A stretch of 56,851 nt of DNA, the filler included, from Dugesia japonica (Eukaryota), in the NCBI GenBank assembly GCA_001938525.1. It is 5 parts of 5 records of this genome, joined end to end, with 100 filler letters (N's around TTAATTAATTAA, not from the genome) between each part and the next. Parts side by side here need not be neighbours in the genome. Positions count along the whole stretch, not along the records: positions 45,788 to 56,851 come from MQRL01612843.1; 4 more parts are not named here. One strand, written 5' to 3'. A model generated the notes under the pieces. It was not told the DNA's origin. It did not search any database and worked only from the letters and a program-made list of their open reading frames with translations. This document shows positions 45,788 through 56,851 of this stretch, piece by piece. The position numbers and the translations under genes were made by a program. Positions within the stretch are counted from its first letter, which is position 1, and the number at the start of each line of letters is the position of its first letter.

Positions 45788-45824
45788 ATATAAATTTTAA
45801 CATATAAATTTTAATATATAAATT

Positions 45825-46181
45825 TTAACATGTTTTATTTTTCATAATTTCTTTTCTCATAATTTCTTCTAATTCTTCATCTGTGTATTTAATTTTATAA
45901 TTACTTTTTTTTTCTCTCTCAATTTCATATTCAATTGCTTTTTGTCTTAATTTATCTCTTTTAATTTTTTTCGTCCGTTCTGACATTATAAATCTATAAT
46001 AATCGGTTCCTTTTTTAAATGGAACACTTTTTTCCTTTATGGATCTTTCTTGTTCCTCACGTGTTTTATTTAACCATTCCCATGCTAAAATTTCATTTTT
46101 CTTTATTATTTCTAATTTATTAACATCTTCATTGTTATGTTTCTTATAATAAGCTTCACAATAATCGATATAATCTGTCAT
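45825..46181 (-). CDS. Hypothetical charged helical protein (118 aa) of the viral element
   Basis: Intact ORF, same strand and codon style as its neighbours; no motif recognised. Confidence 0.7.
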   Translation of the reverse strand: MTDYIDYCEAYYKKHNNEDVNKLEIIKKNEILAWEWLNKTREEQERSIKEKSVPFKKGTDYYRFIMSERTKKIKRDKLRQKAIEYEIEREKKSNYKIKYTDEELEEIMRKEIMKNKTC

Positions 46182-46316
46182 GTCCGAAGGTTAGCTACGC
46201 TTTTTTAAGATATAAATTTTAATCATAACATATACAAATTTTAACATGTCGCATTCTAACATATCAAATGTCAACATATTAACATTTAACATATCAATGG
46301 TCGCATGTAACAAGTT

Positions 46317-46931
46317 TCAGATTCCAAGTTTCATCTTCATTTCAGAAATAACTTTATTTTGATTTTCAAGTAATAATTTTAAATCAATATCCTTAGATTT
46401 CTTATGTCCACTGATCAATTCATGAACATCTGAAACCATTTTCTTAGAAATACTTAATTCTTCATCTGTTAAAATTTCATCATTAACTGCTTTCTGTTGA
46501 AATAAGAATAGTTTATTTTTAACACATTCAAGTTTAGTTATTAATTTTGAATATCTTTCTTTTCGAGATTTAACAAATGAAGTGTTCATTGTTCCAATTA
46601 CAGGCAAAACTGAAATGGCTCCCGTAATAATCGGGATTCCAATTCCAGTAAGTAAAAGACCAACTGGAGTAATAAATATTATCCCGGCTATTCCAATTCC
46701 TGCACTTAATAATATCTGTGTATATTTAATTCCAGAATCAATTCTATTCCATTTCTTTTCTAATTTCTTATAATGTTTAANTTTATCTTTAATATAGTAA
46801 AGATCATTTTCAAAATCTTTAATTCTAGATAATGACAATTTATTTTTTAAATCTTGAATTGTATAACTATCATCTCGAAGACTAGGATAAATATTTATAT
46901 TGTCAGGTTCTTCCCTTGTGGATCTTTCCAT
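46317..46931 (-). CDS. Conserved Polinton-type coiled-coil/transmembrane protein (204 aa)
   Basis: IYPSL..LSRIKD..KKW.R + Gly-rich hydrophobic hairpin (ILLSAGIGIAGIIFITPVGLLLTGIGIPIITGAISVL) + KAVNDEILTDEEL, matching a Polinton family I recall with a KALxDxxISxEEF end. Confidence 0.8.
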   Translation of the reverse strand: MERSTREEPDNINIYPSLRDDSYTIQDLKNKLSLSRIKDFENDLYYIKDKXKHYKKLEKKWNRIDSGIKYTQILLSAGIGIAGIIFITPVGLLLTGIGIPIITGAISVLPVIGTMNTSFVKSRKERYSKLITKLECVKNKLFLFQQKAVNDEILTDEELSISKKMVSDVHELISGHKKSKDIDLKLLLENQNKVISEMKMKLGI

Positions 46932-47085
46932 TTCTTAACTATAAAATTTAACATTTTAATTCTAGATAATGACAATTTATTTTTTAAATCTTGAATTGTA
47001 TAACTATCATCTCTTAAACTAGGATAAATATTGTCAGGTTCCATTTCTTAACTATAAAATTTAACATTTAACATTTAACATTCTC

Positions 47086-48855
47086 TTATAATATTATTAT
47101 AGAATAAACATAAATTCCTTTTGGTAAAGTTAATTCCATAAATTTGCCTGATAAATTAAACTTTTCTATCATATATTCTTTATTAATATCAGATTCATAT
47201 TCTTTTCTTTCGTTATTTAGTTTAATGTAATATTTAAAATTTTTCATAGAAAAACCTTTTACATATATTGTGTTAACAGTTTTTGTAAACGTTAAGGAGA
47301 TAACAAAAGGTTCTTCAACATAATAACATATGGTATTATAAATGACACTAACTTTACCTTTTACTTTAAAATCTATTCTTTCTATTTTAGTACTCATAAT
47401 AGAATAAGTAGGAGTGTCTATTTCATTTGGATATAAAACCGCAAATCTAAATGGAATATTAGAAAAAGAAGGTTCGCCTCCATATTCTATATAATTATCA
47501 AATATTTCTTTTAAAGCTTTAAAATTATAGGTTTTAAAATAAACATTTATTCTATCAACAAATGACTTGTGAAACTTTTTATTTTTATATTCTTTTTTAA
47601 ATTTTTCAAGCATTTCTAAATTATATAAATTAACATTTATTTCTTTAATATGTATATTTTCAGGTAAAACTATTACAATATAATTTATATTTAAATCACT
47701 AGTAATATCAGTACTTTCACGATAAATATTAATATCTCCGGATTCAGGTTTTACATATAAAAATGACACTGCAAGATGATTAATTCTAATGACATATGTA
47801 AACTTTTTATCAGTTTTTCCAATTATATTTATAATAATTTTTTCATTTACTTTTGTATATAAAAAAATTTCTAAAGGTTGATTAAAACTAAACATTCCAG
47901 AGTTAAAATAAACAGTTAAACCTTTATTTTTTAATTTAAAATCAGTGATATATTTATCTATAAGAGAATAACAAGGAGAATTATTAAATAAAATTGAAAA
48001 TATTTTATATTCACTTTCTTCTTTAATATAAGGAAAGTTATTATCAATTAATTCTTTTAAATCTTTAAGTGAAGAATCTGATAATGTATCTTTATATTTT
48101 TTAAATAAAATATTAATTTTATCAGAATATATTTTATGTTGTCGCTCACTTACTTTTTTAGTTTTATAGTCTAAATTTTGAATTAAAGGTTTAAATTTTT
48201 CAATTTTAGATTTCAATATGTTAAAAAGATTTATATGATCATCAAATGTTTTCTTGTTGATATTGTCATATAAAATATTAATTTTTATATTTAATTCATC
48301 AATTTCTTTTTGTAATATAGATGAATCATCATAGGTTAATTCTTTTAATTTAACTAATAAATCACTTTTTTTAAATGGAAACACTTCTAATCTTAATCTT
48401 TCAATTTCATTTTTGATATCATTATATTTTGATATTGAACATTTATTTGTTAGATTTTGAATTTTATTGTTCAAATCCGGATTATTCAAACGTTCGGCTT
48501 TATATTGTAAATAAACTTTATTGATTTCAGTTTGATCCAGTTTTAATAATCTACTGAAAATTATTTCATGTTTTTGTAATTTATATTCAAGAGACTTTAT
48601 ATATTTCAAATTAACTGCATCATTTAATTCTATAGGTTCTTCTATGATTTTTAAACATGTTATAATATCACCTGTTTCATTTACATATTTATTTTCAGCA
48701 TATGACTCTGACATTTTGATTTTAGCATTTACAGATTTCAATATTTCTGTTGAATCGTTAGAATCGGATGTTGCACCAAACTTATTCATTTTTAAATATA
48801 GAATTTTAAAGTGTTTCATATTATCATGTTGAAATGTCGCACCAAACTTATTCAT
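47086..48855 (-). CDS. Putative fibre/virion accessory protein (589 aa; likely start 48789, 567 aa)
   Basis: N-terminal MNKFG, YVNETGD..EPIELNDAVNLKYI (resembles the GD..P...DAxxKxYVD fibre motif), long coiled coil, beta-rich C-terminal domains. Confidence 0.6.
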   Translation of the reverse strand: MNKFGATFQHDNMKHFKILYLKMNKFGATSDSNDSTEILKSVNAKIKMSESYAENKYVNETGDIITCLKIIEEPIELNDAVNLKYIKSLEYKLQKHEIIFSRLLKLDQTEINKVYLQYKAERLNNPDLNNKIQNLTNKCSISKYNDIKNEIERLRLEVFPFKKSDLLVKLKELTYDDSSILQKEIDELNIKINILYDNINKKTFDDHINLFNILKSKIEKFKPLIQNLDYKTKKVSERQHKIYSDKINILFKKYKDTLSDSSLKDLKELIDNNFPYIKEESEYKIFSILFNNSPCYSLIDKYITDFKLKNKGLTVYFNSGMFSFNQPLEIFLYTKVNEKIIINIIGKTDKKFTYVIRINHLAVSFLYVKPESGDINIYRESTDITSDLNINYIVIVLPENIHIKEINVNLYNLEMLEKFKKEYKNKKFHKSFVDRINVYFKTYNFKALKEIFDNYIEYGGEPSFSNIPFRFAVLYPNEIDTPTYSIMSTKIERIDFKVKGKVSVIYNTICYYVEEPFVISLTFTKTVNTIYVKGFSMKNFKYYIKLNNERKEYESDINKEYMIEKFNLSGKFMELTLPKGIYVYSIIIL

Positions 48856-48858
48856 TTT

Positions 48859-49326
48859 TCATGTCGCACCAAACTTATTCATGTTATCATGTTGAATTTT
48901 ATCATATAAATCTTTCATTTCAGATATTATAGTATCAAAAGCTTTAGTTTTAAGAGAATATAAAAAATAAATACATAAGATTCCACATATTTCAGTTCCG
49001 AAATGTTGCACTTGAATTTTATTATAAACTTTAGTATGTTTCTCGATTTCATCTAATGGTTTTAAACCAAAAGAATCAAAATAAACTCCATTTTTAAAAG
49101 CAACCCAATGTGTCCCATTTTGATTTGAATTTTGATAATTAAAAATGTAACATTTTGAAGGTAATATTTTAAATTCCTTTCCATTGGTCAGCGTAGCGCA
49201 TTCATTTTTCATGTAAATTTCAAGATCAAGATTTAAAAAGTTAGATATTGAATATAAATCAAAATTTGTAGTCGTGTTGATTCCAAATGTTTTTAAAAAA
49301 TCTAATAATGAATAATCTTTTTCCAT
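48859..49326 (-). CDS. Adenain-like (C5-type) cysteine maturation protease (155 aa)
   Basis: N..GTHWVA..YFDSFG..P..YN..QVQ....ICG..CIYFL; catalytic His, Asp, Gln and Cys are intact. Confidence 0.95.
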   Translation of the reverse strand: MEKDYSLLDFLKTFGINTTTNFDLYSISNFLNLDLEIYMKNECATLTNGKEFKILPSKCYIFNYQNSNQNGTHWVAFKNGVYFDSFGLKPLDEIEKHTKVYNKIQVQHFGTEICGILCIYFLYSLKTKAFDTIISEMKDLYDKIQHDNMNKFGAT

Positions 49327-49380
49327 TTATTAAATAACAGTTTTAAGTAATAACATGTTATGTCTTTATGGTTTTGGTTT

Positions 49381-49661
49381 TTTAAAATCTAAATGTAGAA
49401 TGTTAACATGTTAAAATCTAAATGTAGAATGTTAACTTGTTAAAATCTATATATTAACTTGTTAAAATCTAAATATTAACTTGTTAAAATCTAAATGTAG
49501 AATGTTAAAATCTAAATGTAGAATGTTAACTTGTTAAAATCTAAATATTAAAATCTATATATTAACTTGTTAAAATCTAAATGTAGAATGTTAAAATCTA
49601 AATGTAGAATGTTAACTTGTTAAAATCTAAATATTAAAATCTAAATATTAAAATCTATATA
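49381..49661. repeat. Intergenic tandem array (TTAAAATCTAAATGTAGAATG / TTAACTTG modules)
   Basis: Direct; lies between protease and penton. Confidence 0.9.
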
Positions 49662-50399
49662 TTAAAATCGATATTTTCTTAGATGAACTAAAATTGTAAT
49701 TGTTTCTTGGTTAAAATCCATCGTGTTAAAGTTTTCATCTACAATGTTAAATTTAAAATTATCAATGTAATCTGTGTTAATTTTAGAATAAATAGGTGGA
49801 GATGGACGTTCAACTATTTTATATCCAAATGGTACTGTGTTAATAGGAAATGAATATAAAAGATTAATTTGTTTTGTTTCTTTGTTGGTTGTTGAATAGT
49901 TACCTTTGACAATGTCGCATGTAATATTTATCGCATTAATATTTATAATGTTGATTTTATCAGAAGAATAGTAATCCCCAGGTACATATTTTCCAGGTTT
50001 AAATCCTAGGATAGTATGTAAGAATGAATTAGAATCAAAAGTTATTGTTACTTTAGTTTTGATGTTACATTTAGATGTTGCAGTGTCAGGTGTAATTTCG
50101 AGATATTTCTCTAATCTAGATGACATTTCTTTTACTTCATATGATCCAGGTTCTAAGAATTTGTCTCCTTTTATAGTTTCTTCTCTTTCTGGCTTTATGG
50201 TTTTTGGTTTTTCTGGTTCTTTTATTAATATTTTACCTTCAACATGGAATTTGTTATTTAAATCGGTGATATTAAAAATAATATTGTAGCATGAAAAATA
50301 TAATAATCCAAGTTCGTATTCTGAATCTAATTTAAATGGATAATTCATGTTAACTTTTAAATTATCTTCTGTTCCAACTACTAAGAATTGATGAGACAT
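49662..50399 (-). CDS. Minor capsid protein / penton (single jelly roll), 245 aa from MSHQF
   Basis: YPFKLDSEYELGLLYF..YN.IFNI...NNKF..PGSYEV..ILGF..INITCDIVKGNY..LYSF..PFGYKIVERP..PIY.....IVDEN....DF..ETITILVHLR, the typical Polinton penton signature; the track start at 50459 lies in repeats. Confidence 0.9.
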   Translation of the reverse strand: MSHQFLVVGTEDNLKVNMNYPFKLDSEYELGLLYFSCYNIIFNITDLNNKFHVEGKILIKEPEKPKTIKPEREETIKGDKFLEPGSYEVKEMSSRLEKYLEITPDTATSKCNIKTKVTITFDSNSFLHTILGFKPGKYVPGDYYSSDKINIININAINITCDIVKGNYSTTNKETKQINLLYSFPINTVPFGYKIVERPSPPIYSKINTDYIDNFKFNIVDENFNTMDFNQETITILVHLRKYRF

Positions 50400-50435
50400 A
50401 TGTAGTGATTTCTTATAAGAAATATTTAGAGTTAT

Positions 50436-50926
50436 TATTTTACATTTCTTATTTCGCATTTCTTATTTTACATTTCTTATTTCTTATTTCTTATTTCACA
50501 AGTTATATTTCACAAGTTATATTTCACATTTCNNNNNNNNNNNNNNNNNNNNNNNNNNNNNNNNNNNNNNNNNNNNNNNNNNNNNNNNNNNNNNNNNNNN
50601 NNNNNNNNNNNNNNNNCATTTCTTATTTCTTATTTCTTATTTCACAAGTTACATTTCTTATTTCACAAGTTACATTTCACAAGTTACATTTCTTATTTCG
50701 CATTTCTTATTTCACAAGTTACATTTCGCATTTCACAAGTTACATTTCACAAGTTACATTTCTTATTTCACAAGTTACATTTCACAAGTTATATTTCACA
50801 AGTTACATTTCACAAGTTACATTTCNNNNNNNNNNNNNNNNNNNNNNNNNNNNNNNNNNNNNNNNNNNNNNNNNNNNNNNNNNNNNNNNNNNNNNNNNNN
50901 NNNNNNNNNNNNNNNNNNNNNNNNNN
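50436..50926. repeat. Intergenic heptamer array (ATTTCAC/AAGTTAC/ATTTCTT/ATTTCGC) with N gaps
   Basis: Direct 7-bp periodicity. Confidence 0.9.
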
Positions 50927-51745
50927 TTGTTTACAGAGAGTCTTGATTTCGGATGAGAGATTATCATGTCCAGATTTGGTAGCTGAAATTAGTAATGTTA
51001 ACTTTTCAAATAATGCAATTGGATTTTCTTCCTTTATGGTTTTTTTTCTAGATTTAAGACCATGTCCTTTTACTGGTTCTTCTTTTTCTGTATCATATTC
51101 TGTTCCTGATTCTTGTTCTGGTTTAATCCCTTTCTTTCTTCTTTCTTTTACGGTTTTTTCTTTGGGTAGATCAACTTTTCTAAATTTATTTTTTAATTTA
51201 GTAACATAATCACAATTAGTTGGTAAAGGTGAAATTAATTTTAAATAAGTTTCGATTTCTTCAGGTGATTCTTTACCATCAATATTTCCTAGGATTAATC
51301 TAAAAATTCCATCTGAGTATGGTATAACTTCGGATTTAAATAAGAAATATTTATTATCATTTTCGGTGAATAAATGAATTTTATTTTCTTTTAGGGTTAT
51401 TTCTAGGAAACTTTTAATTTTATCAAGTGCTATGACATCTAATTTAGAAAACCTAGGGATAATTGTTTGAGTTAATTTTCCAGATGCATTAACGTTTTCA
51501 ATGGAATATTCAGGTGAGAATGGTAAAATTTTTTCATTTAAAAAGAATTTTGTTATATCATTAGTTTCTGATTTAGTTTGTTGTGTTCCAAGTTTTTCAA
51601 GTGCAGAGATCATTGGAAGTTGTAGAGTTGACATGTTAGATTGTAAAGTGTTATAATCTTGAACTTTAGAACAAAAAAAGATATTATATTTTTCTTGTGC
51701 TTTAATTAATGCTTTTAATTCTTTAATTCTTTGTTCGACTTCCAT
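50927..51745 (-). CDS. Conserved Polinton hypothetical protein (at least 273 aa; 3' end in N gap)
   Basis: C-terminal GHGL...ENPIALFEKLTLLISATKSGHDNLSSEIKTL resembles the Polinton motif GxG..DPxxLxxRLxLLxAxxxAGNxxxxxEI. Confidence 0.8.
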
Positions 51746-51807
51746 TATTTTCCTTTATGGTTTTTCCTTTATGGTTTCGCGTAGCTCTTTCTTTAAGATT
51801 TAATATG

Positions 51808-52521
51808 TTAATATTCATCTTCAGTTTCATCTTCATCTGTTTCATAATCATCTTCATCTTCATCTTCGGTTTCATCTGTTTCATCTTCAGTTTCATCATC
51901 AAAACCTTTTCCGGATTTATATGGATTTAGATATAAACCATTTCCTTTCTTAATTATATGAGTTCCGGATTTAAATTTTTTAGTTAAATTTTTAAATTTA
52001 GGATCAATATTTCTTAAATATTTATGAATTGCTTTTCCTTGCCATGGATTTAGGTAGATTCCACCTTTTCCTTTATGACTTTTGTCTTTATGACTTTTGT
52101 CTTTATGACTTTTGGTTTTTGGTTTCTTTTTCTTGATTCCTGATCCTGATGTTCCTGGTCCTGATGCTGGTGTTTCTTCTCCTTCTGCCTTTATGGCCTT
52201 TATGGATTTTTCTGTTGATAGTTTTTTAGCTTCTGTTTGTTTTTGCAATTCAATTAATTCACCTTGTTTTTGTTTATTAATAGCATCTCTAGAATTTGAT
52301 ACTGTTTGTGCAATGCCGGATGCAATTCCAGTTGAAGATGCTAAAGCACCAATAACCCATGGTATTGCAGCTAAGAATGCGAAACCACCTTCAGAATGTT
52401 TTTTAATAGCCTCATCTTTAACTTTTTTAGAAATATAATAATTTTTACCGTTAATACGTACAGATTTACATTTTCTAGAATTTATGATTTTAATTAATTC
52501 TTCTTCTGTTGCTTCTGACAT
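51808..52521 (-). CDS. Putative protease-processed core / membrane-lytic virion protein (237 aa)
   Basis: EGG-FAFLAAIPWVIGALASSTGIASGIAQTV hydrophobic helix, repeated GxG-(I/L)YLNP(W/Y), Lys-rich SHKDK repeats, acidic tail; similar to adintovirus pX/pVI-like proteins. Confidence 0.75.
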   Translation of the reverse strand: MSEATEEELIKIINSRKCKSVRINGKNYYISKKVKDEAIKKHSEGGFAFLAAIPWVIGALASSTGIASGIAQTVSNSRDAINKQKQGELIELQKQTEAKKLSTEKSIKAIKAEGEETPASGPGTSGSGIKKKKPKTKSHKDKSHKDKSHKGKGGIYLNPWQGKAIHKYLRNIDPKFKNLTKKFKSGTHIIKKGNGLYLNPYKSGKGFDDETEDETDETEDEDEDDYETDEDETEDEY

Positions 52522-52586
52522 TTTATAATATTAATATTTAGTATTTCTAATTTAATTAATAACAATTTACAATTTAATTTTAATAA

Positions 52587-52822
52587 TGACACATTTTCCA
52601 ATTTAGTATTTAACATTTAGAATTTAGAATTTAGTATTTTATATTTCCAATTTAGTATTTAGTATTTAACATTTTATATTTAGAATTTTATATTTAATAG
52701 TGACACATTTTCCAATTTAGTATTTAACATTTAGAATTTAGAATTTAGTATTTTATATTTAGAATTTAGTATTTAGTATTTAACATTTTATATTTAGAAT
52801 TTATATTTAGAATTTAGAATTT
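52587..52822. repeat. Intergenic heptamer array ATTT+NNN with a 114-bp higher-order duplication
   Basis: atttagt atttaac atttaga atttaga atttagt attttat...; tgacacattttcca occurs at 52587 and 52701. Confidence 0.9.
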
Positions 52823-55800
52823 AACATTTTAAATTATGATTTATTAGATCTAATCTGAAATGCCATTCTCCACAATTACATAGATATTGATTTCCATATG
52901 GCCATGTCCTTGTTGCATTGTCTTCGATTATTCTTTTATCAGAATAAGCTGTTAATGCAATTTTATCTTGTTTACTTAATTTAATTACATGGAGTTCTGA
53001 TTTTAAAGAATAATTTGTTCCATAGATTATTTTCTTTGGTTCATTTATGACTTTTTCAAATTCTTGCATGCCAATTTTATTGAAACTCTGAACACCTTTA
53101 TGTTTTTTAGTTAATTTTATTTTATTGTTATCTTCATATTCATATGCATAAGATTTAGGTTTTATAAAACAACATTTTAAAATTTTAGACTTTGGTAATT
53201 CATCTTTCATCTGGAAAAGATCATTACCGGTTAATGAATTAAGAATTTTAAGATTATCATTTCCAATGATCTCTATGAATACAGAATCAGTGTCAGAATA
53301 ATGAATTTTATAGTTATCTTCTCCTATTTTGGGTACTAATTGGTTATATACGAAATTATACATTACTTCTTTAGCATATTCTAGAATAGTGAATCCAAGA
53401 TATGGAAATTTGTTATATTTTAGATTAGTTTTTGTTAAGTGAACTGCGGCTAAAGAAGATGTGATTCCTGGTTCTAATTTAAAACTTTTACAACTTAAAT
53501 ATGTTGTTTTAGATAAAAGATTTTGATATTCTTTATCAGTTCCTACAATATGAACATTGCAACGGTTGCGAACATTTTCTAGGGTTTTACCATAGAATGA
53601 GTTGTTCAAATCTTTAAAGAAAGATACTCCGAATTCATCGTTGTTTTTTTTAGCTAGGGTTCTTTGTTCAATATTAAAATCAATGTAACTTTTTAACCAT
53701 GTTGATGTTGGCATTAGATATTTAGAATGTATCTTTTTTAATTTCATTCCTAATTTGAGATAAAGATCTAATGTTGAACCGAGGATTATATAATTTTTCT
53801 TATCTAATTGGTTCATTGTTAGTTTAATATTATCTTTTGTTAGATTTCTATTAAATGATTTTTGATAATTAGATAACATGTCAGGTGTAATAAGTATTCT
53901 ATCAGGTGCCAATGGAAAATATTTCGTTTTGTGATGTATTTCTCTTGGATAATCAAGATCAACTTCATAGAGATAATTCATTGTAGGAGTTGAAGGTTCA
54001 TATAGATATTCCATTTCATTAGTTATTTTGTTTAACACTGGTTCACATTCATAGAATTCTCCAGTTGGCAATGGTAATGTCATACATGATGCATATAAAG
54101 AGTTTGCATCAAGATATTTTATATGTCGATTTTCCATTATATTATCAACATTAATTTCTATGTTTGAATTCATCATTTTTATAAGATCTTCAAAATCTGA
54201 TTTATTTAATTCTCTGGTATATGGATTTTTAATGTTATCATGACTAAAGACATGTCGATCGCCTTCTTCACCTGAATAGCCACCTCGAACTCCGCGTTCA
54301 AATTTTAAGAAAGTGTTATAGGTTTCTGGTTTTGCATATTTAAGTTTAACTTGTGTGAATCGCATTCCAGCTTGCCATGTTAAACCTGATGCAGTGTAAC
54401 AATAACATGGATCTATTTTATAAAAGTCGAGACATATCTTTCTAAAATTTTCAATGTAATCTGCTAAGATTAGAACATCTAATCTCATGTAATGTAACAT
54501 GTAATTCCAAAGATTTTTAAATTTTTTCATGTCATTTTTAAATTCTTGATAATTGTTATCGGTGATTCCTTCTTGTCTTAGTATGCTAAAGAAATCTTGT
54601 TTCTCTGGTATTAGTTTTGATTTTAATAATTTAGTAATTTCTTCTGGATTGTTTCCTTTTACATAATCATATGGAAATACAGCTTTTTTAGGTTTTAGAT
54701 TGAAAGATGATAATATTTCATGATTTCCTGATATGGAAAGTGTTATTCCCATTTTTTCAACTGTTGTTTTACATATTTTTAATGAATCTAGGAATCTAAT
54801 ACGACCATAATTAAATGCGATATATTGATCATCAGAATGTGGAATTATATTTTTTACATATTTTGAATTATTATATAAAAGTTGTATGAAAAATAAATGA
54901 TTATCATAACCCATTGCATTGTGAAAATAACATGGGATGAATAGATTTTTTTCTGATTGTTTGCAATATTTATGTGCATAACCATGAGGTTCTTTGCTAT
55001 AATAATCATAATCAAAAATTGGATCTTTTAGAATTGGCTTTTCACAATAATAACAATTTGAATTTTCAATGAATTCTGGGTGTTCTTTTATGTAGTCTTT
55101 ATCTATATTATTAAATGTAATATTAATGTAATCAAGAAACTTTATAAATTCATTAACAACATTTTCACCTGTTGAATGATAATAATTAGTTGGTATTAAT
55201 TCTGGATATTCAGATTTTATATATATTCCTAGGCTTATTGGTTTTTGGATGTTATAACTATCGGTGTAACATTCGAAATCACAATATATTACAAATGGAA
55301 TTTTATTTTTGAAATAATAATTTTCAAATTTAAAGTATTCTTGATGTGGAAATGTAACATTAGTTGTTTTATGATGAAAGCATTCTTCTTGATGTTTTAA
55401 TAAGACATTTTCAGAAGAATAAATATTCATGCAACCAAGACATAATTTATTACCAGGTTTAATATCAAATAAAGCATGCACATTTCTAACTAATATAAAA
55501 TGGGATTTATAAATTAATAAGTTACATTTATTTTCTTCTGGTTTTGGTTTTACTGTGAAATGTTTAACACGAATTGGTATAATTTTAGCGTCTAATTCGA
55601 AAACATTTATTTTGTAATTATTTAACTTTTCGAAGATCTTAATATCCTCGAGTTCTGATGGGAAATTCATTCCTTGGATATTTAATTCTGGTAAATGTGG
55701 AATATAATTATTTACACGTGTTGGATTATGAAATTTATATTTATGTGCGAGAATTGAATATAATAAACATTTATCATCAAAATTTTCAATGTTAATAATT

Positions 55801-56630
55801 CCTTTTTTATTCATTTCTTTTGGTAATTCATGATAAGTAAATGCACCAGCTTTTATTCTTGAACCATATTTTTCTAATTGTATTCTATAATCAATTATAT
55901 GTGACATGCTCCAATTAGATTCGGCTAGATCTTTATTTCGCATATAATTTTCTAATCGTGTAAATACTTGATTTAATTTATTAGTTATTGAATCTTTTGC
56001 ATAAATTTTTACATTTGGTATGTAGGAATAAAATGTTGCTGTTCTATCTTCTTTTTCATAATGACATGCAACACCCATTCTAAAATAAAACTTATAACCT
56101 AGTTTAAAAAACTTTCTAACAATTTCTTCTATTTCTGGTCTAATAAATTCGGCTGACTCATATATTTCATCATTAATATTTTTTATCATTTTTAATCTAC
56201 TATTTAAATAGACATCGATATAATCATGTTCTGGATATGTTTGTTGGTTAAATACTTCAGTGATATGTTTTGGTTTTGATTTCCAATTTTTATCTATTTT
56301 CTTTTGTAATAGTAAATGTCGTTGATTAGTTCTTTTATGTTCATTTATTAATTCTAAAGTATCAAAATGTCTATCACAGAGTTCACAATATAATTCTATT
56401 TTACCACATGGAGTTTTTTTCATGTGAACATTTAATGCATGTGGTGTTCTAAAATTTTTATTGCAAACTGGACATGGGGCATAATCATTTGAATCAATAA
56501 TATAACATTTTCTAGATGATACATGCGAATTTAAACCACGTCTATTTTTAAATAATTTATTACAATTGGGACATGTTAATTCAGTCATTTTTATTTTATC
56601 CTCTTTTTTTATTATATAAAATTTAATCAT
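52821..56630 (-). CDS. polB: Protein-primed family B DNA polymerase with terminal-protein region and zinc fingers (1269 aa; alternative start 56588)
   Basis: ExoI YCDFEC, ExoII FHNAMGYD, ExoIII YMRLDV, motif A YLDANSLYASCM, motif B KDLNNSFYGK, motif C YSDTDS, KPKSY, KGV; Polinton-type GIINIENFDDKCLLYSILA. Confidence 0.97.
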   Translation of the reverse strand: MIKFYIIKKEDKIKMTELTCPNCNKLFKNRRGLNSHVSSRKCYIIDSNDYAPCPVCNKNFRTPHALNVHMKKTPCGKIELYCELCDRHFDTLELINEHKRTNQRHLLLQKKIDKNWKSKPKHITEVFNQQTYPEHDYIDVYLNSRLKMIKNINDEIYESAEFIRPEIEEIVRKFFKLGYKFYFRMGVACHYEKEDRTATFYSYIPNVKIYAKDSITNKLNQVFTRLENYMRNKDLAESNWSMSHIIDYRIQLEKYGSRIKAGAFTYHELPKEMNKKGIINIENFDDKCLLYSILAHKYKFHNPTRVNNYIPHLPELNIQGMNFPSELEDIKIFEKLNNYKINVFELDAKIIPIRVKHFTVKPKPEENKCNLLIYKSHFILVRNVHALFDIKPGNKLCLGCMNIYSSENVLLKHQEECFHHKTTNVTFPHQEYFKFENYYFKNKIPFVIYCDFECYTDSYNIQKPISLGIYIKSEYPELIPTNYYHSTGENVVNEFIKFLDYINITFNNIDKDYIKEHPEFIENSNCYYCEKPILKDPIFDYDYYSKEPHGYAHKYCKQSEKNLFIPCYFHNAMGYDNHLFFIQLLYNNSKYVKNIIPHSDDQYIAFNYGRIRFLDSLKICKTTVEKMGITLSISGNHEILSSFNLKPKKAVFPYDYVKGNNPEEITKLLKSKLIPEKQDFFSILRQEGITDNNYQEFKNDMKKFKNLWNYMLHYMRLDVLILADYIENFRKICLDFYKIDPCYCYTASGLTWQAGMRFTQVKLKYAKPETYNTFLKFERGVRGGYSGEEGDRHVFSHDNIKNPYTRELNKSDFEDLIKMMNSNIEINVDNIMENRHIKYLDANSLYASCMTLPLPTGEFYECEPVLNKITNEMEYLYEPSTPTMNYLYEVDLDYPREIHHKTKYFPLAPDRILITPDMLSNYQKSFNRNLTKDNIKLTMNQLDKKNYIILGSTLDLYLKLGMKLKKIHSKYLMPTSTWLKSYIDFNIEQRTLAKKNNDEFGVSFFKDLNNSFYGKTLENVRNRCNVHIVGTDKEYQNLLSKTTYLSCKSFKLEPGITSSLAAVHLTKTNLKYNKFPYLGFTILEYAKEVMYNFVYNQLVPKIGEDNYKIHYSDTDSVFIEIIGNDNLKILNSLTGNDLFQMKDELPKSKILKCCFIKPKSYAYEYEDNNKIKLTKKHKGVQSFNKIGMQEFEKVINEPKKIIYGTNYSLKSELHVIKLSKQDKIALTAYSDKRIIEDNATRTWPYGNQYLCNCGEWHFRLDLINHNLKC

Positions 56631-56661
56631 AGTATATGTTTCCTCTTAAATTCAAAGACGA

Positions 56662-56812
56662 TATTTTGAAATTTCGCATTTAGAATTTATAATTTTGGAA
56701 TTTAGAATTTTAGAATTTCGCATTTAGAATATGAAATTTCGCATTTCGCATTTTAGAATTTAGAATTTTGGAATTTTGCATTTAGAATATGAAATTTCGC
56801 ATTTCGCATTTT
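56662..56812. repeat. Heptamer array upstream of polB (ATTTCGC/ATTTAGA/ATTTTGGA)
   Basis: Direct. Confidence 0.85.
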
Positions 56813-56851
56813 AACCCTTGTACCCCTGGGACATTAAGGGTTGTTTTATAT

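What the first reader, a model, noticed from the sequence alone, without database searches (positions are those of the whole stretch)
45788..56851. Apparently intact, divergent Polinton/adintovirus-like virus occupying a whole scaffold
Seen: eight intronless ORFs on one strand with no internal stops in the called sequence, whereas the host TEs in this window are all decayed. Catalytic motifs of pPolB and adenain are intact. Gene order is polB, core/lytic, conserved Polinton protein, penton, protease, fibre-like, TM protein, orphan. There is no host junction. Established: pPolB + adenain + penton define Polintons/adintoviruses. Inference: a recently active endogenous virus or a co-sequenced free virus of this invertebrate, probably an undescribed lineage.
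Basis: partly seen in the sequence, partly recalled or inferred. Interest (0 to 1): 0.9.

Follow-up and report, generated by a model that had tools for sequence, protein, structure and literature searches.

The report
Divergent Polinton-like virus fragment, completeness unproven
This 11-kb, very AT-rich scaffold carries eight open genes of a highly divergent Polinton-like virus element (an intact protein-primed DNA polymerase, a likely adenovirus-type protease, a possible capsid vertex protein and five orphans), but it shows no integrase, packaging ATPase, recognisable major capsid gene or long terminal repeats, so it cannot be called a whole or intact virus.

Summary
In detail: eight long ORFs lie on the minus strand and fill 84.5% of the piece, far beyond chance. 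The 1269-aa protein is a real protein-primed family B polymerase. All exonuclease and polymerase motifs are present, and its best relatives are only 35-39% identical. The 155-aa protein is probably an adenain-like protease. The 265-aa protein has two known relatives and gives weak fold hints to the mavirus penton. The 589-aa "fibre-like" protein has no relatives among 1.84 billion representatives, but it contains two homologous beta-rich modules. The "conserved Polinton protein" has no homologues at all, and it runs into an assembly gap, so its end is unknown.

The piece holds no integrase, no P-loop ATPase, no identifiable double-jelly-roll capsid gene and no terminal inverted repeat beyond 7 nt. 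Both gaps and both scaffold ends lie in or beside heptamer-phased tandem arrays that fill the larger intergenic spaces. The scaffold ends therefore look like assembly breaks.

Verdict: a new, very divergent Polinton-like lineage. The "intact whole virus" reading is only partly supported. The closest described analogue is the group of about 12-kb, integrase-less polinton-like viruses associated with entomopoxviruses.

The parts
45788..56851 (-). Whole piece: one-strand cluster of eight intronless genes of a Polinton-like element, GC 0.17-0.29
52821..56630 (-). [quoted passage not shown]
   Evidence: 87 relatives with E down to 2.7e-130. 8 of 19 aligned relatives match Pfam PF03175, best 4.8e-27. 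All catalytic motifs are present and conserved.
56325..56576 (-). Three C2H2 zinc fingers at the PolB N-terminus (residues 19-102)
   Evidence: Pfam zf-C2H2 families, E about 2e-5. PDB zinc-finger hits. Shared by a minority of relatives, including a Mytilus edulis protein.
54963..55055 (-). Cys-rich module between Exo I and Exo II (residues 526-556); the corresponding region in relatives matches Endonuclease_7
   Evidence: Cys526, Cys529 and Cys556 are invariant in 19/19 sequences. 13 of 19 relatives match PF02945. The query itself is below the Pfam threshold.
51808..52521 (-). 237-aa protein with one hydrophobic segment (48-67), a Lys-rich tract encoded by a perfect 15-nt tandem repeat, and an acidic tail; a core- or membrane-active-like description only
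   Evidence: No family or PDB match.
50927..51745 (-). Orphan gene, open for 273 codons and cut off by the assembly gap; true end unknown
   Evidence: No homologue in the 5.8-billion collection. No family or PDB match.
50435..50926 (.). Intergenic tandem array (7/14-nt units) that holds both assembly gaps (50533-50616, 50826-50926)
49662..50459 (-). Candidate single-jelly-roll penton (265-aa ORF; the start is probably at 50399, giving about 245 aa)
   Evidence: Two relatives at 38-43% identity. All-beta but low-confidence model, pLDDT 41. The mavirus penton ranks first in the PDB fold search, with minor-capsid hits in BFVD; none is significant.
48859..49326 (-). Adenain-like (clan CE) cysteine protease, 155 aa
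   Evidence: Pfam Peptidase_C5, E 0.0057 and 16.8 bits, below the 21.3 cut-off, over the Gln-Cys region. His73/Asp84/Gln107/Cys114 are present.
47086..48855 (-). 589-aa orphan with a helical N-terminal half and two homologous beta-rich modules; candidate spike/fibre or cryptic major capsid protein
   Evidence: No true relative among 1.84 billion representatives. Secondary structure comes from a low-confidence model.
47638..48000 (-). Beta-rich module 1 of the 589-aa protein (residues about 286-406)
   Evidence: Homologous to module 2: BLASTP E 4e-5. Local score 91, against a shuffle maximum of 67 in 2000.
47098..47445 (-). Beta-rich module 2 of the 589-aa protein (residues about 471-586)
46317..46931 (-). 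204-aa membrane protein (hydrophobic stretch 70-115); one unread base at 46781
46932..47085 (-). Partial tandem duplicate of the leader and 5' end of the 204-aa gene
   Evidence: 78 nt at 96% identity and 31 nt at 100%
45825..46181 (-). 118-aa charged orphan
56663..56813 (.). Heptamer-phased tandem array upstream of PolB, next to the right scaffold end
   Evidence: Identity at lag 7 is 0.67, against 0.28 at other lags.
52550..52843 (.). Heptamer-phased tandem array upstream of the 237-aa gene
49382..49669 (.). Tandem array (14/29/86-nt periods) upstream of the protease gene
45788..45831 (.). 14-nt tandem array (3.1 copies) forming the left scaffold end

Best explanation
The piece is part, and possibly most, of the genome of a very divergent Polinton-like virus or virus-derived element (double-jelly-roll virus world, phylum Preplasmiviricota).

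Shown. [quoted passage not shown] The polymerase also carries N-terminal C2H2 fingers and a conserved Cys-rich module. All eight genes sit on one strand, are open, and are far longer than chance allows.

Inferred from family knowledge. The polymerase replicates a linear dsDNA from its ends, using a protein primer that probably lies in its own N-terminal region. The 155-aa cysteine protease matures virion precursors, as adenain does. The 265-aa all-beta protein forms the capsid vertices. The 589-aa protein, with its helical half and two duplicated beta modules, is either the attachment spike or a cryptic major capsid protein. The small hydrophobic, basic and acidic proteins are core or membrane-active virion components.

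No integrase, packaging ATPase or long terminal repeat is present. Both scaffold ends and both gaps sit at tandem arrays. The scaffold is therefore most likely an assembly-limited fragment. Whether the element is free, integrated or complete is not known.
For: - ORF statistics.
- PolB homology and motifs: 87 hits, E down to 2.7e-130; PF03175 in 8 of 19 relatives, best 4.8e-27; the closest relative P0001 scores 75 bits to PF03175; motif conservation.
- The relatives' clusters are multi-copy, with up to 593 members, and sit on contigs of megabase size, as endogenous Polinton-type elements do. The named relatives are from Mytilus edulis.
- Protease: a sub-threshold hit to Peptidase_C5, the only one of 24736 Pfam models the protease hits at E<=0.1, falls on the nucleophile region, and the His/Asp/Gln/Cys residues are present.
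- Penton: the protein is all-beta. The mavirus penton takes ranks 1-3 of 350,542 PDB chains, followed by pentameric jelly-roll capsid proteins. Minor capsid proteins of mavirus, Klosneuvirus and Catovirus, adomavirus LO5 and an adintovirus protein appear among the BFVD hits.
- The protease and penton candidates are adjacent, and the 589-aa gene lies one gene away from the penton candidate. That is the usual position of the MCP gene in Polintons (PMC4028283).
- Fragment reading: arrays lie at both ends and at both gaps, and no TIR is found.
Against: - No capsid protein is demonstrated. Both structure models are of low confidence (pLDDT 41 and 35), and every fold match is statistically insignificant.
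- Five of the eight genes have no assignable family.
- The hallmark integrase, ATPase and MCP are not seen.
- The query PolB itself gets no direct Pfam polymerase hit. Its membership rests on transitive homology plus motifs.
- The exact scaffold ends share a 7-nt inverted identity that is rare by chance (2.75e-4). This speaks for real genome ends rather than assembly breaks.
Confidence: 0.6

Rival explanations
1. The scaffold is a complete, small (about 11 kb), non-integrating linear genome with very short inverted termini. It would be a minimal PolB-encoding polinton-like virus without its own integrase or ATPase, perhaps dependent on a helper virus, like the roughly 12-kb polinton-like viruses found in entomopoxvirus occlusion bodies.
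For: - The first and last 7 nt of the scaffold are inverted copies of each other. Random position pairs in the piece reach this in 55 of 200,000 trials.
- PolB sits at one end, as replicases do in the entomopoxvirus-associated PLVs (PMC11296320).
- Those PLVs are about 12 kb. They have PolB and an adenovirus-type protease, no detectable integrase, and capsid genes invisible to first-pass searches.
- The piece is 84.5% coding with no host sequence.
- GC of about 0.23 is in the range I recall for entomopoxviruses (own knowledge, not tested).
Against: - Seven nucleotides is far shorter than the terminal repeats reported for those PLVs or for Polintons, and nothing extends the match.
- The left end is the start of a tandem array, only 37 nt beyond a gene's stop codon. 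That is typical of an assembly break.
- The described PLVs do have an A32-like ATPase, whereas no P-loop exists here.
- A five-base initiator motif that I recalled for poxvirus late promoters is not consistently oriented in the upstream arrays.
Confidence: 0.2
2. A non-viral or de-virialised pPolB element: a linear plasmid-like or transposon-like replicon, or a decayed endogenous copy that has lost its morphogenesis module. In this reading the orphan ORFs are not capsid proteins.
For: - No MCP, ATPase or integrase is detectable.
- Some Polintons lack MCP, protease and ATPase together (PMC4028283).
- PF03175 also covers organellar and plasmid polymerases.
- Strong AT-richness and a PolB with a long N-terminal extension are also features of fungal linear plasmids (own knowledge).
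Against: - A protease of the virion-maturation type is probably present.
- The penton-type fold hints come from two independent libraries.
- All eight ORFs are open in 23% GC DNA, where stops arise easily. This argues for selection on all of them, not decay.
- No RNA polymerase gene of the linear-plasmid type is present.
Confidence: 0.12
3. The element does not belong to the sequenced invertebrate. It would come from a co-sequenced organism such as a protist, a parasite or food, or from that organism's virus.
For: - There is no host junction.
- The element's proteins are absent from a 15-billion-protein collection.
- Its relatives are mostly unnamed environmental or assembly proteins, one of them binned as a bacterium.
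- Adintovirus-class PolBs also occur in unicellular eukaryotes (PMC8502044).
Against: - The only eukaryote-named relatives are from an animal, Mytilus edulis, where they lie on chromosome-scale contigs.
- N-terminal C2H2 fingers are shared with that animal protein.
Confidence: 0.15

Closest known systems
Polintons/Mavericks, including adintoviruses (Polintoviricetes/Adintoviridae)
   Same: Protein-primed PolB of the PF03175 type, with relatives that are multi-copy in large eukaryotic contigs. An adenain-type protease sits next to a candidate penton. The genes are intronless.
   Different: The piece has no rve integrase, no FtsK/A32-type ATPase, no recognisable hexon-like MCP and no long TIRs. 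It is 11 kb against 15-20 kb. PolB identity to anything known is at most 39%. The virion-module proteins are orphans. Every larger intergenic space is filled with heptamer-phased tandem arrays.
Entomopoxvirus-associated polinton-like viruses AHEV_PLV1 and Ca_PLV1 (Barth et al. 2024, PMC11296320)
   Same: Similar size (about 12 kb) and a PolB near one end. They have an adenovirus-type cysteine protease, no detectable integrase, and capsid genes that ordinary searches miss. Relatives of the Ca_PLV1 PolB are reported from a bivalve, a coral and arthropods.
   Different: Those elements have clear terminal repeats, an A32-like ATPase and a mu core-like protein found through alignments, none of which is shown here. 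No sequence comparison was made, because fetching them was barred.
Virophage mavirus
   Same: PolB plus a cysteine protease plus a penton. The mavirus penton crystal structure is the top, though insignificant, fold match of the 265-aa model.
   Different: Mavirus also has an integrase, an ATPase, a clear DJR MCP and long TIRs. No sequence-level similarity was detected.
pPolB-encoding linear plasmids of fungi and organelles
   Same: Small, very AT-rich linear replicons whose PolB has a long N-terminal, terminal-protein-like extension (own knowledge). They share the Pfam family PF03175.
   Different: They carry an RNA polymerase gene and long TIRs, and they lack an adenain-like protease and jelly-roll candidates. 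The PolB relatives found here lie on nuclear-sized contigs.

Membership tests
Polinton/Maverick (sensu stricto) | [quoted passage not shown] | tested here: met
Polinton/Maverick (sensu stricto) | Retrovirus-like (rve) integrase, required by definition (PMC8502044, PMC5499653) | tested here: not met
   No rve hit in any of the eight proteins. 84.5% of the piece is taken by these ORFs and the rest is tandem array. An integrase could lie beyond the scaffold ends.
Polinton/Maverick (sensu stricto) | Long terminal inverted repeats and target-site duplication | tested here: not met
   Only a 7-nt inverted identity at the exact ends. The target-site duplication is untestable without a host junction.
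Polinton/adintovirus morphogenesis module | FtsK/A32-type packaging ATPase | tested here: not met
   No Walker A or loose P-loop in six frames. No Pfam or PHROG hit.
Polinton/adintovirus morphogenesis module | Double-jelly-roll major capsid protein (hexon-like) | tested here: inconclusive
   No sequence or family match. The only candidate is the 589-aa orphan, which has two homologous beta modules. Its model is unusable (pLDDT 35) and its fold search meaningless.
Polinton/adintovirus morphogenesis module | Single-jelly-roll penton | tested here: inconclusive
   All-beta, low-confidence model. The mavirus penton is the top hit, but with E 0.047 and TM 0.27. BFVD gives minor-capsid hints. No sequence-profile hit.
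Polinton/adintovirus morphogenesis module | Adenain-type (Peptidase_C5, clan CE) cysteine protease with His, Asp/Glu, Gln and Cys | tested here: inconclusive
   Pfam PF00770 at E 0.0057, 16.8 bits against a cut-off of 21.3. The residues are present in the right order. No PDB sequence hit. I judge it probable.
Adintoviridae | PolB and virion proteins clustering with the Alpha or Beta adintovirus clades | not tested
   No phylogeny was built. Reference sequences of animal viruses were not to be fetched.
Entomopoxvirus-associated PLVs | Sequence homology of the morphogenesis genes to AHEV_PLV1/CBEV_PLV1 or AHEV_PLV2/Ca_PLV1, plus terminal repeats | not tested
   The comparison is with the paper's description only. 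No terminal repeats were found here.
pPolB linear plasmids | Plasmid-type RNA polymerase gene and long TIRs | tested here: not met
   No RNA polymerase family hit. No TIR.

The most novel reading that the evidence does not exclude
The scaffold is the whole genome of a minimal linear dsDNA virus bounded by 7-nt inverted ends. It would do without its own integrase and packaging ATPase. Its 589-aa protein would be a major capsid protein whose two jelly rolls still show sequence similarity to each other, that is, a young or re-duplicated double jelly roll. The heptamer arrays in front of the genes would be its regulatory signals, possibly read by the polymerase's own zinc fingers or by a helper virus.
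Probability: 0.08. Interest if true: 0.8.

Novelty: new variant of a known kind. Interest (0 to 1): 0.45.

Why it matters
If the lineage is real and active, it would extend the known diversity of Polinton-like viruses towards small, integrase-less forms whose capsid genes escape sequence searches. It would also supply a polymerase clade with C2H2 fingers and an Endonuclease VII-like module that the literature I could search does not describe. The internally duplicated beta modules of the 589-aa protein bear on how double-jelly-roll or spike proteins arise. In practical terms, the case shows that 'no host junction' and 'all ORFs open' do not establish a complete virus when scaffold ends fall in repeats.

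Tried and rejected
- Pfam, PHROGs and PDB sequence searches of all eight proteins gave only zinc fingers and a sub-threshold protease hit. A PDB profile search with the PolB alignment found only zinc fingers. A profile of the penton candidate found nothing.
- The single hit of the 589-aa protein among 1.84 billion representatives is a repeat-inflated match to a bacterial PPC-domain protein, and I rejected it.
- The AlphaFold models of the 265-aa and 589-aa proteins are of low confidence. The fold search for the 589-aa model was meaningless.
- A TIR search by inverted-repeat finder and by short-word BLAST of the 800-nt ends found nothing beyond 7 nt.
- The GC-richer hairpin near the right end is not significant (z -1.5).
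- Two short motifs shared by some upstream regions are not above chance.
- A poxvirus-type initiator motif shows no consistent orientation in the arrays.
- No tRNA or Rfam family was found.
- An exact look-up of the element's proteins found none in the collection.
- A literature search for PolB-C2H2 fusions in Polintons found nothing specific.

Two slips, disclosed here.
1. In one search my script deleted the N runs before shuffling. That joined the segments on either side of the gaps inside the script for a statistic. Only counts were printed and nothing was saved. The '+ 201' figure from that call is invalid. The test was redone on uninterrupted segments.
2. In one search I counted a five-to-six-base promoter motif that I recalled from memory. 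That result should be treated as unverified.
Full report
**What is there.** The piece (45788-56851, 11064 bases) is very AT-rich, with windowed GC of 0.17-0.29. It carries eight ORFs of 118 to 1269 codons, all on the minus strand. Together they cover 9351 bases, or 84.5%. In uninterrupted segments the minus-strand stop-free runs reach 1274 and 590 codons. Two hundred composition-matched shuffles never exceed 148 and 131, and the plus strand stays within chance at 109 and 104. The ORFs are therefore real genes. No tRNA and no Rfam family is present.

**The gaps (tested first, as asked).**
- The gap at 50533-50616 has the same tandem array of 7/14-nt units on both sides. That array has stops in all three minus-strand frames within seven codons, and no gene crosses the gap.
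- The gap at 50826-50926 cuts the third gene. It is open for 273 codons right up to the gap. After the gap comes array sequence that stops every frame within 3-7 codons. The gene's end lies in or just after the gap, and its length is unknown.
- The '311 aa' ORF and a 183-aa plus-strand ORF are artefacts of N being translated as X. The array happens to have no stops on the plus strand.
- One further N (46781) lies in the 204-aa gene.
- I made no attempt to fill any gap.

**Breaks.** In the called sequence none of the eight genes has an internal stop. The PolB aligns with its relatives over 97% of the searched region with all motifs in place, so I see no frameshift there. Frameshifts in the orphan genes cannot be judged, because they have no relatives. 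One gene is truncated by an assembly gap, which is not a mutation. One partial duplicate of a gene start exists (see below).

**The polymerase.**
- The 1269-aa protein gets no direct Pfam polymerase hit. A search of 5.8 billion proteins with residues 430-1269 gave 87 relatives, with E down to 2.7e-130 and 25-35% identity by BLASTP. Identity to the nearest relative is 39% in the multiple alignment.
- Eight of 19 aligned relatives match PF03175 (DNA_pol_B_2, best 4.8e-27) and 13 match PF02945 (Endonuclease_7). The nearest relative scores 75 bits to PF03175.
- The Exo I, II and III motifs, Pol motifs A, B and C, and the KxY motif are all present in the query. Their key residues are shared by 17-19 of the 19 sequences.
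- A Cys-rich module between Exo I and II has three invariant cysteines.
- The N-terminus holds three C2H2 fingers. A minority of relatives share them, including a Mytilus edulis protein.
- Residues 271-430 are also conserved with the relatives. I infer, without testing, that this N-terminal part provides the priming (terminal-protein) function, as in other protein-primed polymerases.
- The relatives' clusters are multi-copy, with up to 593 members at 90% identity, and lie on contigs of up to megabases. This is the pattern of endogenous Polinton-type elements.
- The nearest clade is as AT-biased in amino-acid composition as the query.

**The protease.** The 155-aa protein's only Pfam match at E<=0.1 is Peptidase_C5 (adenovirus endoprotease), at E 0.0057 and 16.8 bits against a cut-off of 21.3. 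The match covers the nucleophile region. His73, Asp84, Gln107 and Cys114 are present, and the Gln-to-Cys spacing of seven is what I recall for adenain (the comparison is from my own knowledge). There is no PDB sequence hit. I judge it a probable clan-CE maturation protease.

**The penton candidate.**
- The 265-aa ORF has only two relatives in the collection, at 38-43% identity on tiny contigs.
- Their starts align with its 21st codon, so the true start is probably at 50399.
- The model built from three sequences is all-beta but of low confidence, with pLDDT 41.
- With that caveat, the mavirus penton crystal structure takes ranks 1-3 among 350,542 PDB chains, followed by polyomavirus VP1 and papillomavirus L1 pentamers (E at best 0.047, TM at most 0.27).
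- The BFVD list contains minor capsid proteins of mavirus, Klosneuvirus and Catovirus, adomavirus LO5 and an adintovirus protein.
- None of this is significant. It is a consistent hint from two libraries, not a proof.

**The 589-aa protein.** It has no true relative among 1.84 billion representatives. The single hit is a repeat artefact. The single-sequence model is unusable (pLDDT 35), and its fold search was meaningless. Its secondary structure suggests a helical region at about 80-275 and two beta-rich blocks separated by helices. Those two blocks (about 286-406 and 471-586) are homologous to each other. BLASTP gives E 4e-5. The local score is 91, against 36.5 +/- 6.7 and a maximum of 67 in 2000 shuffles, and against at most 49 for control segments of the element's own proteins. 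The gene lies one gene away from the penton candidate, which is the usual place of the MCP gene in Polintons (PMC4028283). I cannot decide between these.

**The remaining genes.**
- The 237-aa protein has one hydrophobic segment, a Lys-rich tract encoded by a perfect 15-nt tandem repeat, and an acidic tail. 'Core/lytic' is a fair description but has no support from homology.
- The 273-codon gene has no homologue at all, so 'conserved Polinton protein' is not supported.
- The 204-aa protein has a long hydrophobic stretch.
- The 118-aa protein is a charged orphan.
- The 237-, 204-, 118- and 155-aa proteins were tested only against Pfam and PHROGs, and two of them (the 237- and 155-aa proteins) also against PDB sequences.

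**What is missing.** There is no rve integrase, and no P-loop in any of the six frames. There is no recognisable double-jelly-roll protein. No terminal inverted repeat extends beyond a 7-nt identity of the exact ends. Polintons are defined by pPolB plus an rve integrase (PMC8502044, PMC5499653). They are typically 15-20 kb and carry ATPase, protease, MCP and penton (PMC4028283). The piece therefore fails tested defining features of a Polinton in the strict sense, although it clearly works like one in its replication gene and probably in its protease.

**Ends and arrays.**
- Every larger intergenic space is filled by tandem arrays with a 7-nt phase. Identity at lag 7 or 14 is 0.46-0.95, against about 0.3 at other lags and in coding sequence.
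- Both gaps lie in such an array. The left scaffold end is itself an array that starts 37 nt beyond a stop codon, and the right end lies 38 nt beyond another array.
- This pattern argues that the assembly broke at repeats. 'No host junction' therefore says little.
- Against that, the exact ends share a 7-nt inverted identity that random position pairs reach in only 55 of 200,000 trials. I keep 'complete small linear genome' as a rival at 0.2.

**Comparison with known systems.** The closest described analogue I found is the set of roughly 12-kb polinton-like viruses co-sequenced from entomopoxvirus occlusion bodies, together with one integrated beetle copy (PMC11296320).
- Shared: PolB near one end, an adenovirus-type protease, no detectable integrase, capsid genes invisible to first-pass searches, and PolB relatives in a bivalve, a coral and arthropods.
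- Different: those elements have clear terminal repeats and an A32-like ATPase.
- I compared with the paper's description only.

Synteny, copy comparison and selection analysis were therefore not possible.

**Verdict.** This is a real and very divergent Polinton-like element with an apparently functional polymerase. Completeness, activity, host and capsid genes are all unproven. I rate it a new variant of a known kind, of moderate interest.

Noticed in passing
window 56663-56813, 52550-52843, 50435-50825, 49382-49669, 47055-47082, 46226-46297, 45788-45831: Heptamer-phased tandem arrays fill the larger intergenic spaces and lie upstream of most genes. The unit families differ between arrays, and one array (49382-49669) is in the opposite orientation. 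Their function is unknown. They could be regulatory sites, sites for the polymerase's zinc fingers, or slippage products.
   Followed up: partly
window 46932-47085 versus 46818-46956: A recent partial tandem duplication of the leader and first codons of the 204-aa gene: 78 nt at 96% identity and 31 nt at 100%.
   Followed up: yes
window 48780-48900: A 21-nt stretch that begins with a start codon occurs three times around the protease/589-aa gene boundary: at the end of the protease, at the start of the 589-aa ORF and at its 23rd codon. The two ORFs are in the same frame, separated only by the protease stop codon and one further codon.
   Followed up: partly
window 45788-45794 and 56845-56851: The exact scaffold ends are 7-nt inverted copies of each other. 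The chance estimate is 2.75e-4, and the match does not extend.
   Followed up: yes
window 56812-56843: This is the only GC-richer spot in the non-coding DNA. It has a 7-bp inverted repeat around a 16-nt loop and lies 8 nt from the right end. Its folding energy is not significant (z -1.5).
   Followed up: yes
window 52071-52114 and 51814-51901: In-frame tandem repeats lie inside the 237-aa gene. A perfect 15-nt unit (2.9 copies) encodes a Lys/His-rich pentapeptide repeat, and a 12/39-nt array encodes the acidic tail.
   Followed up: no
window 50617-50825: The array between the two gaps has no stop codon in any plus-strand frame. Together with the N runs this creates a spurious 183-aa plus-strand ORF.
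   Followed up: yes
relatives P0001-P0033, P0078, P0082: The PolB clade nearest to the query is uniformly biased to AT-rich codons (FYMINK fraction 0.39-0.46 in all but P0011, P0019 and P0032), including the copies in Mytilus edulis. More distant relatives are less biased. AT-richness may be a property of the lineage rather than of the host.
   Followed up: partly
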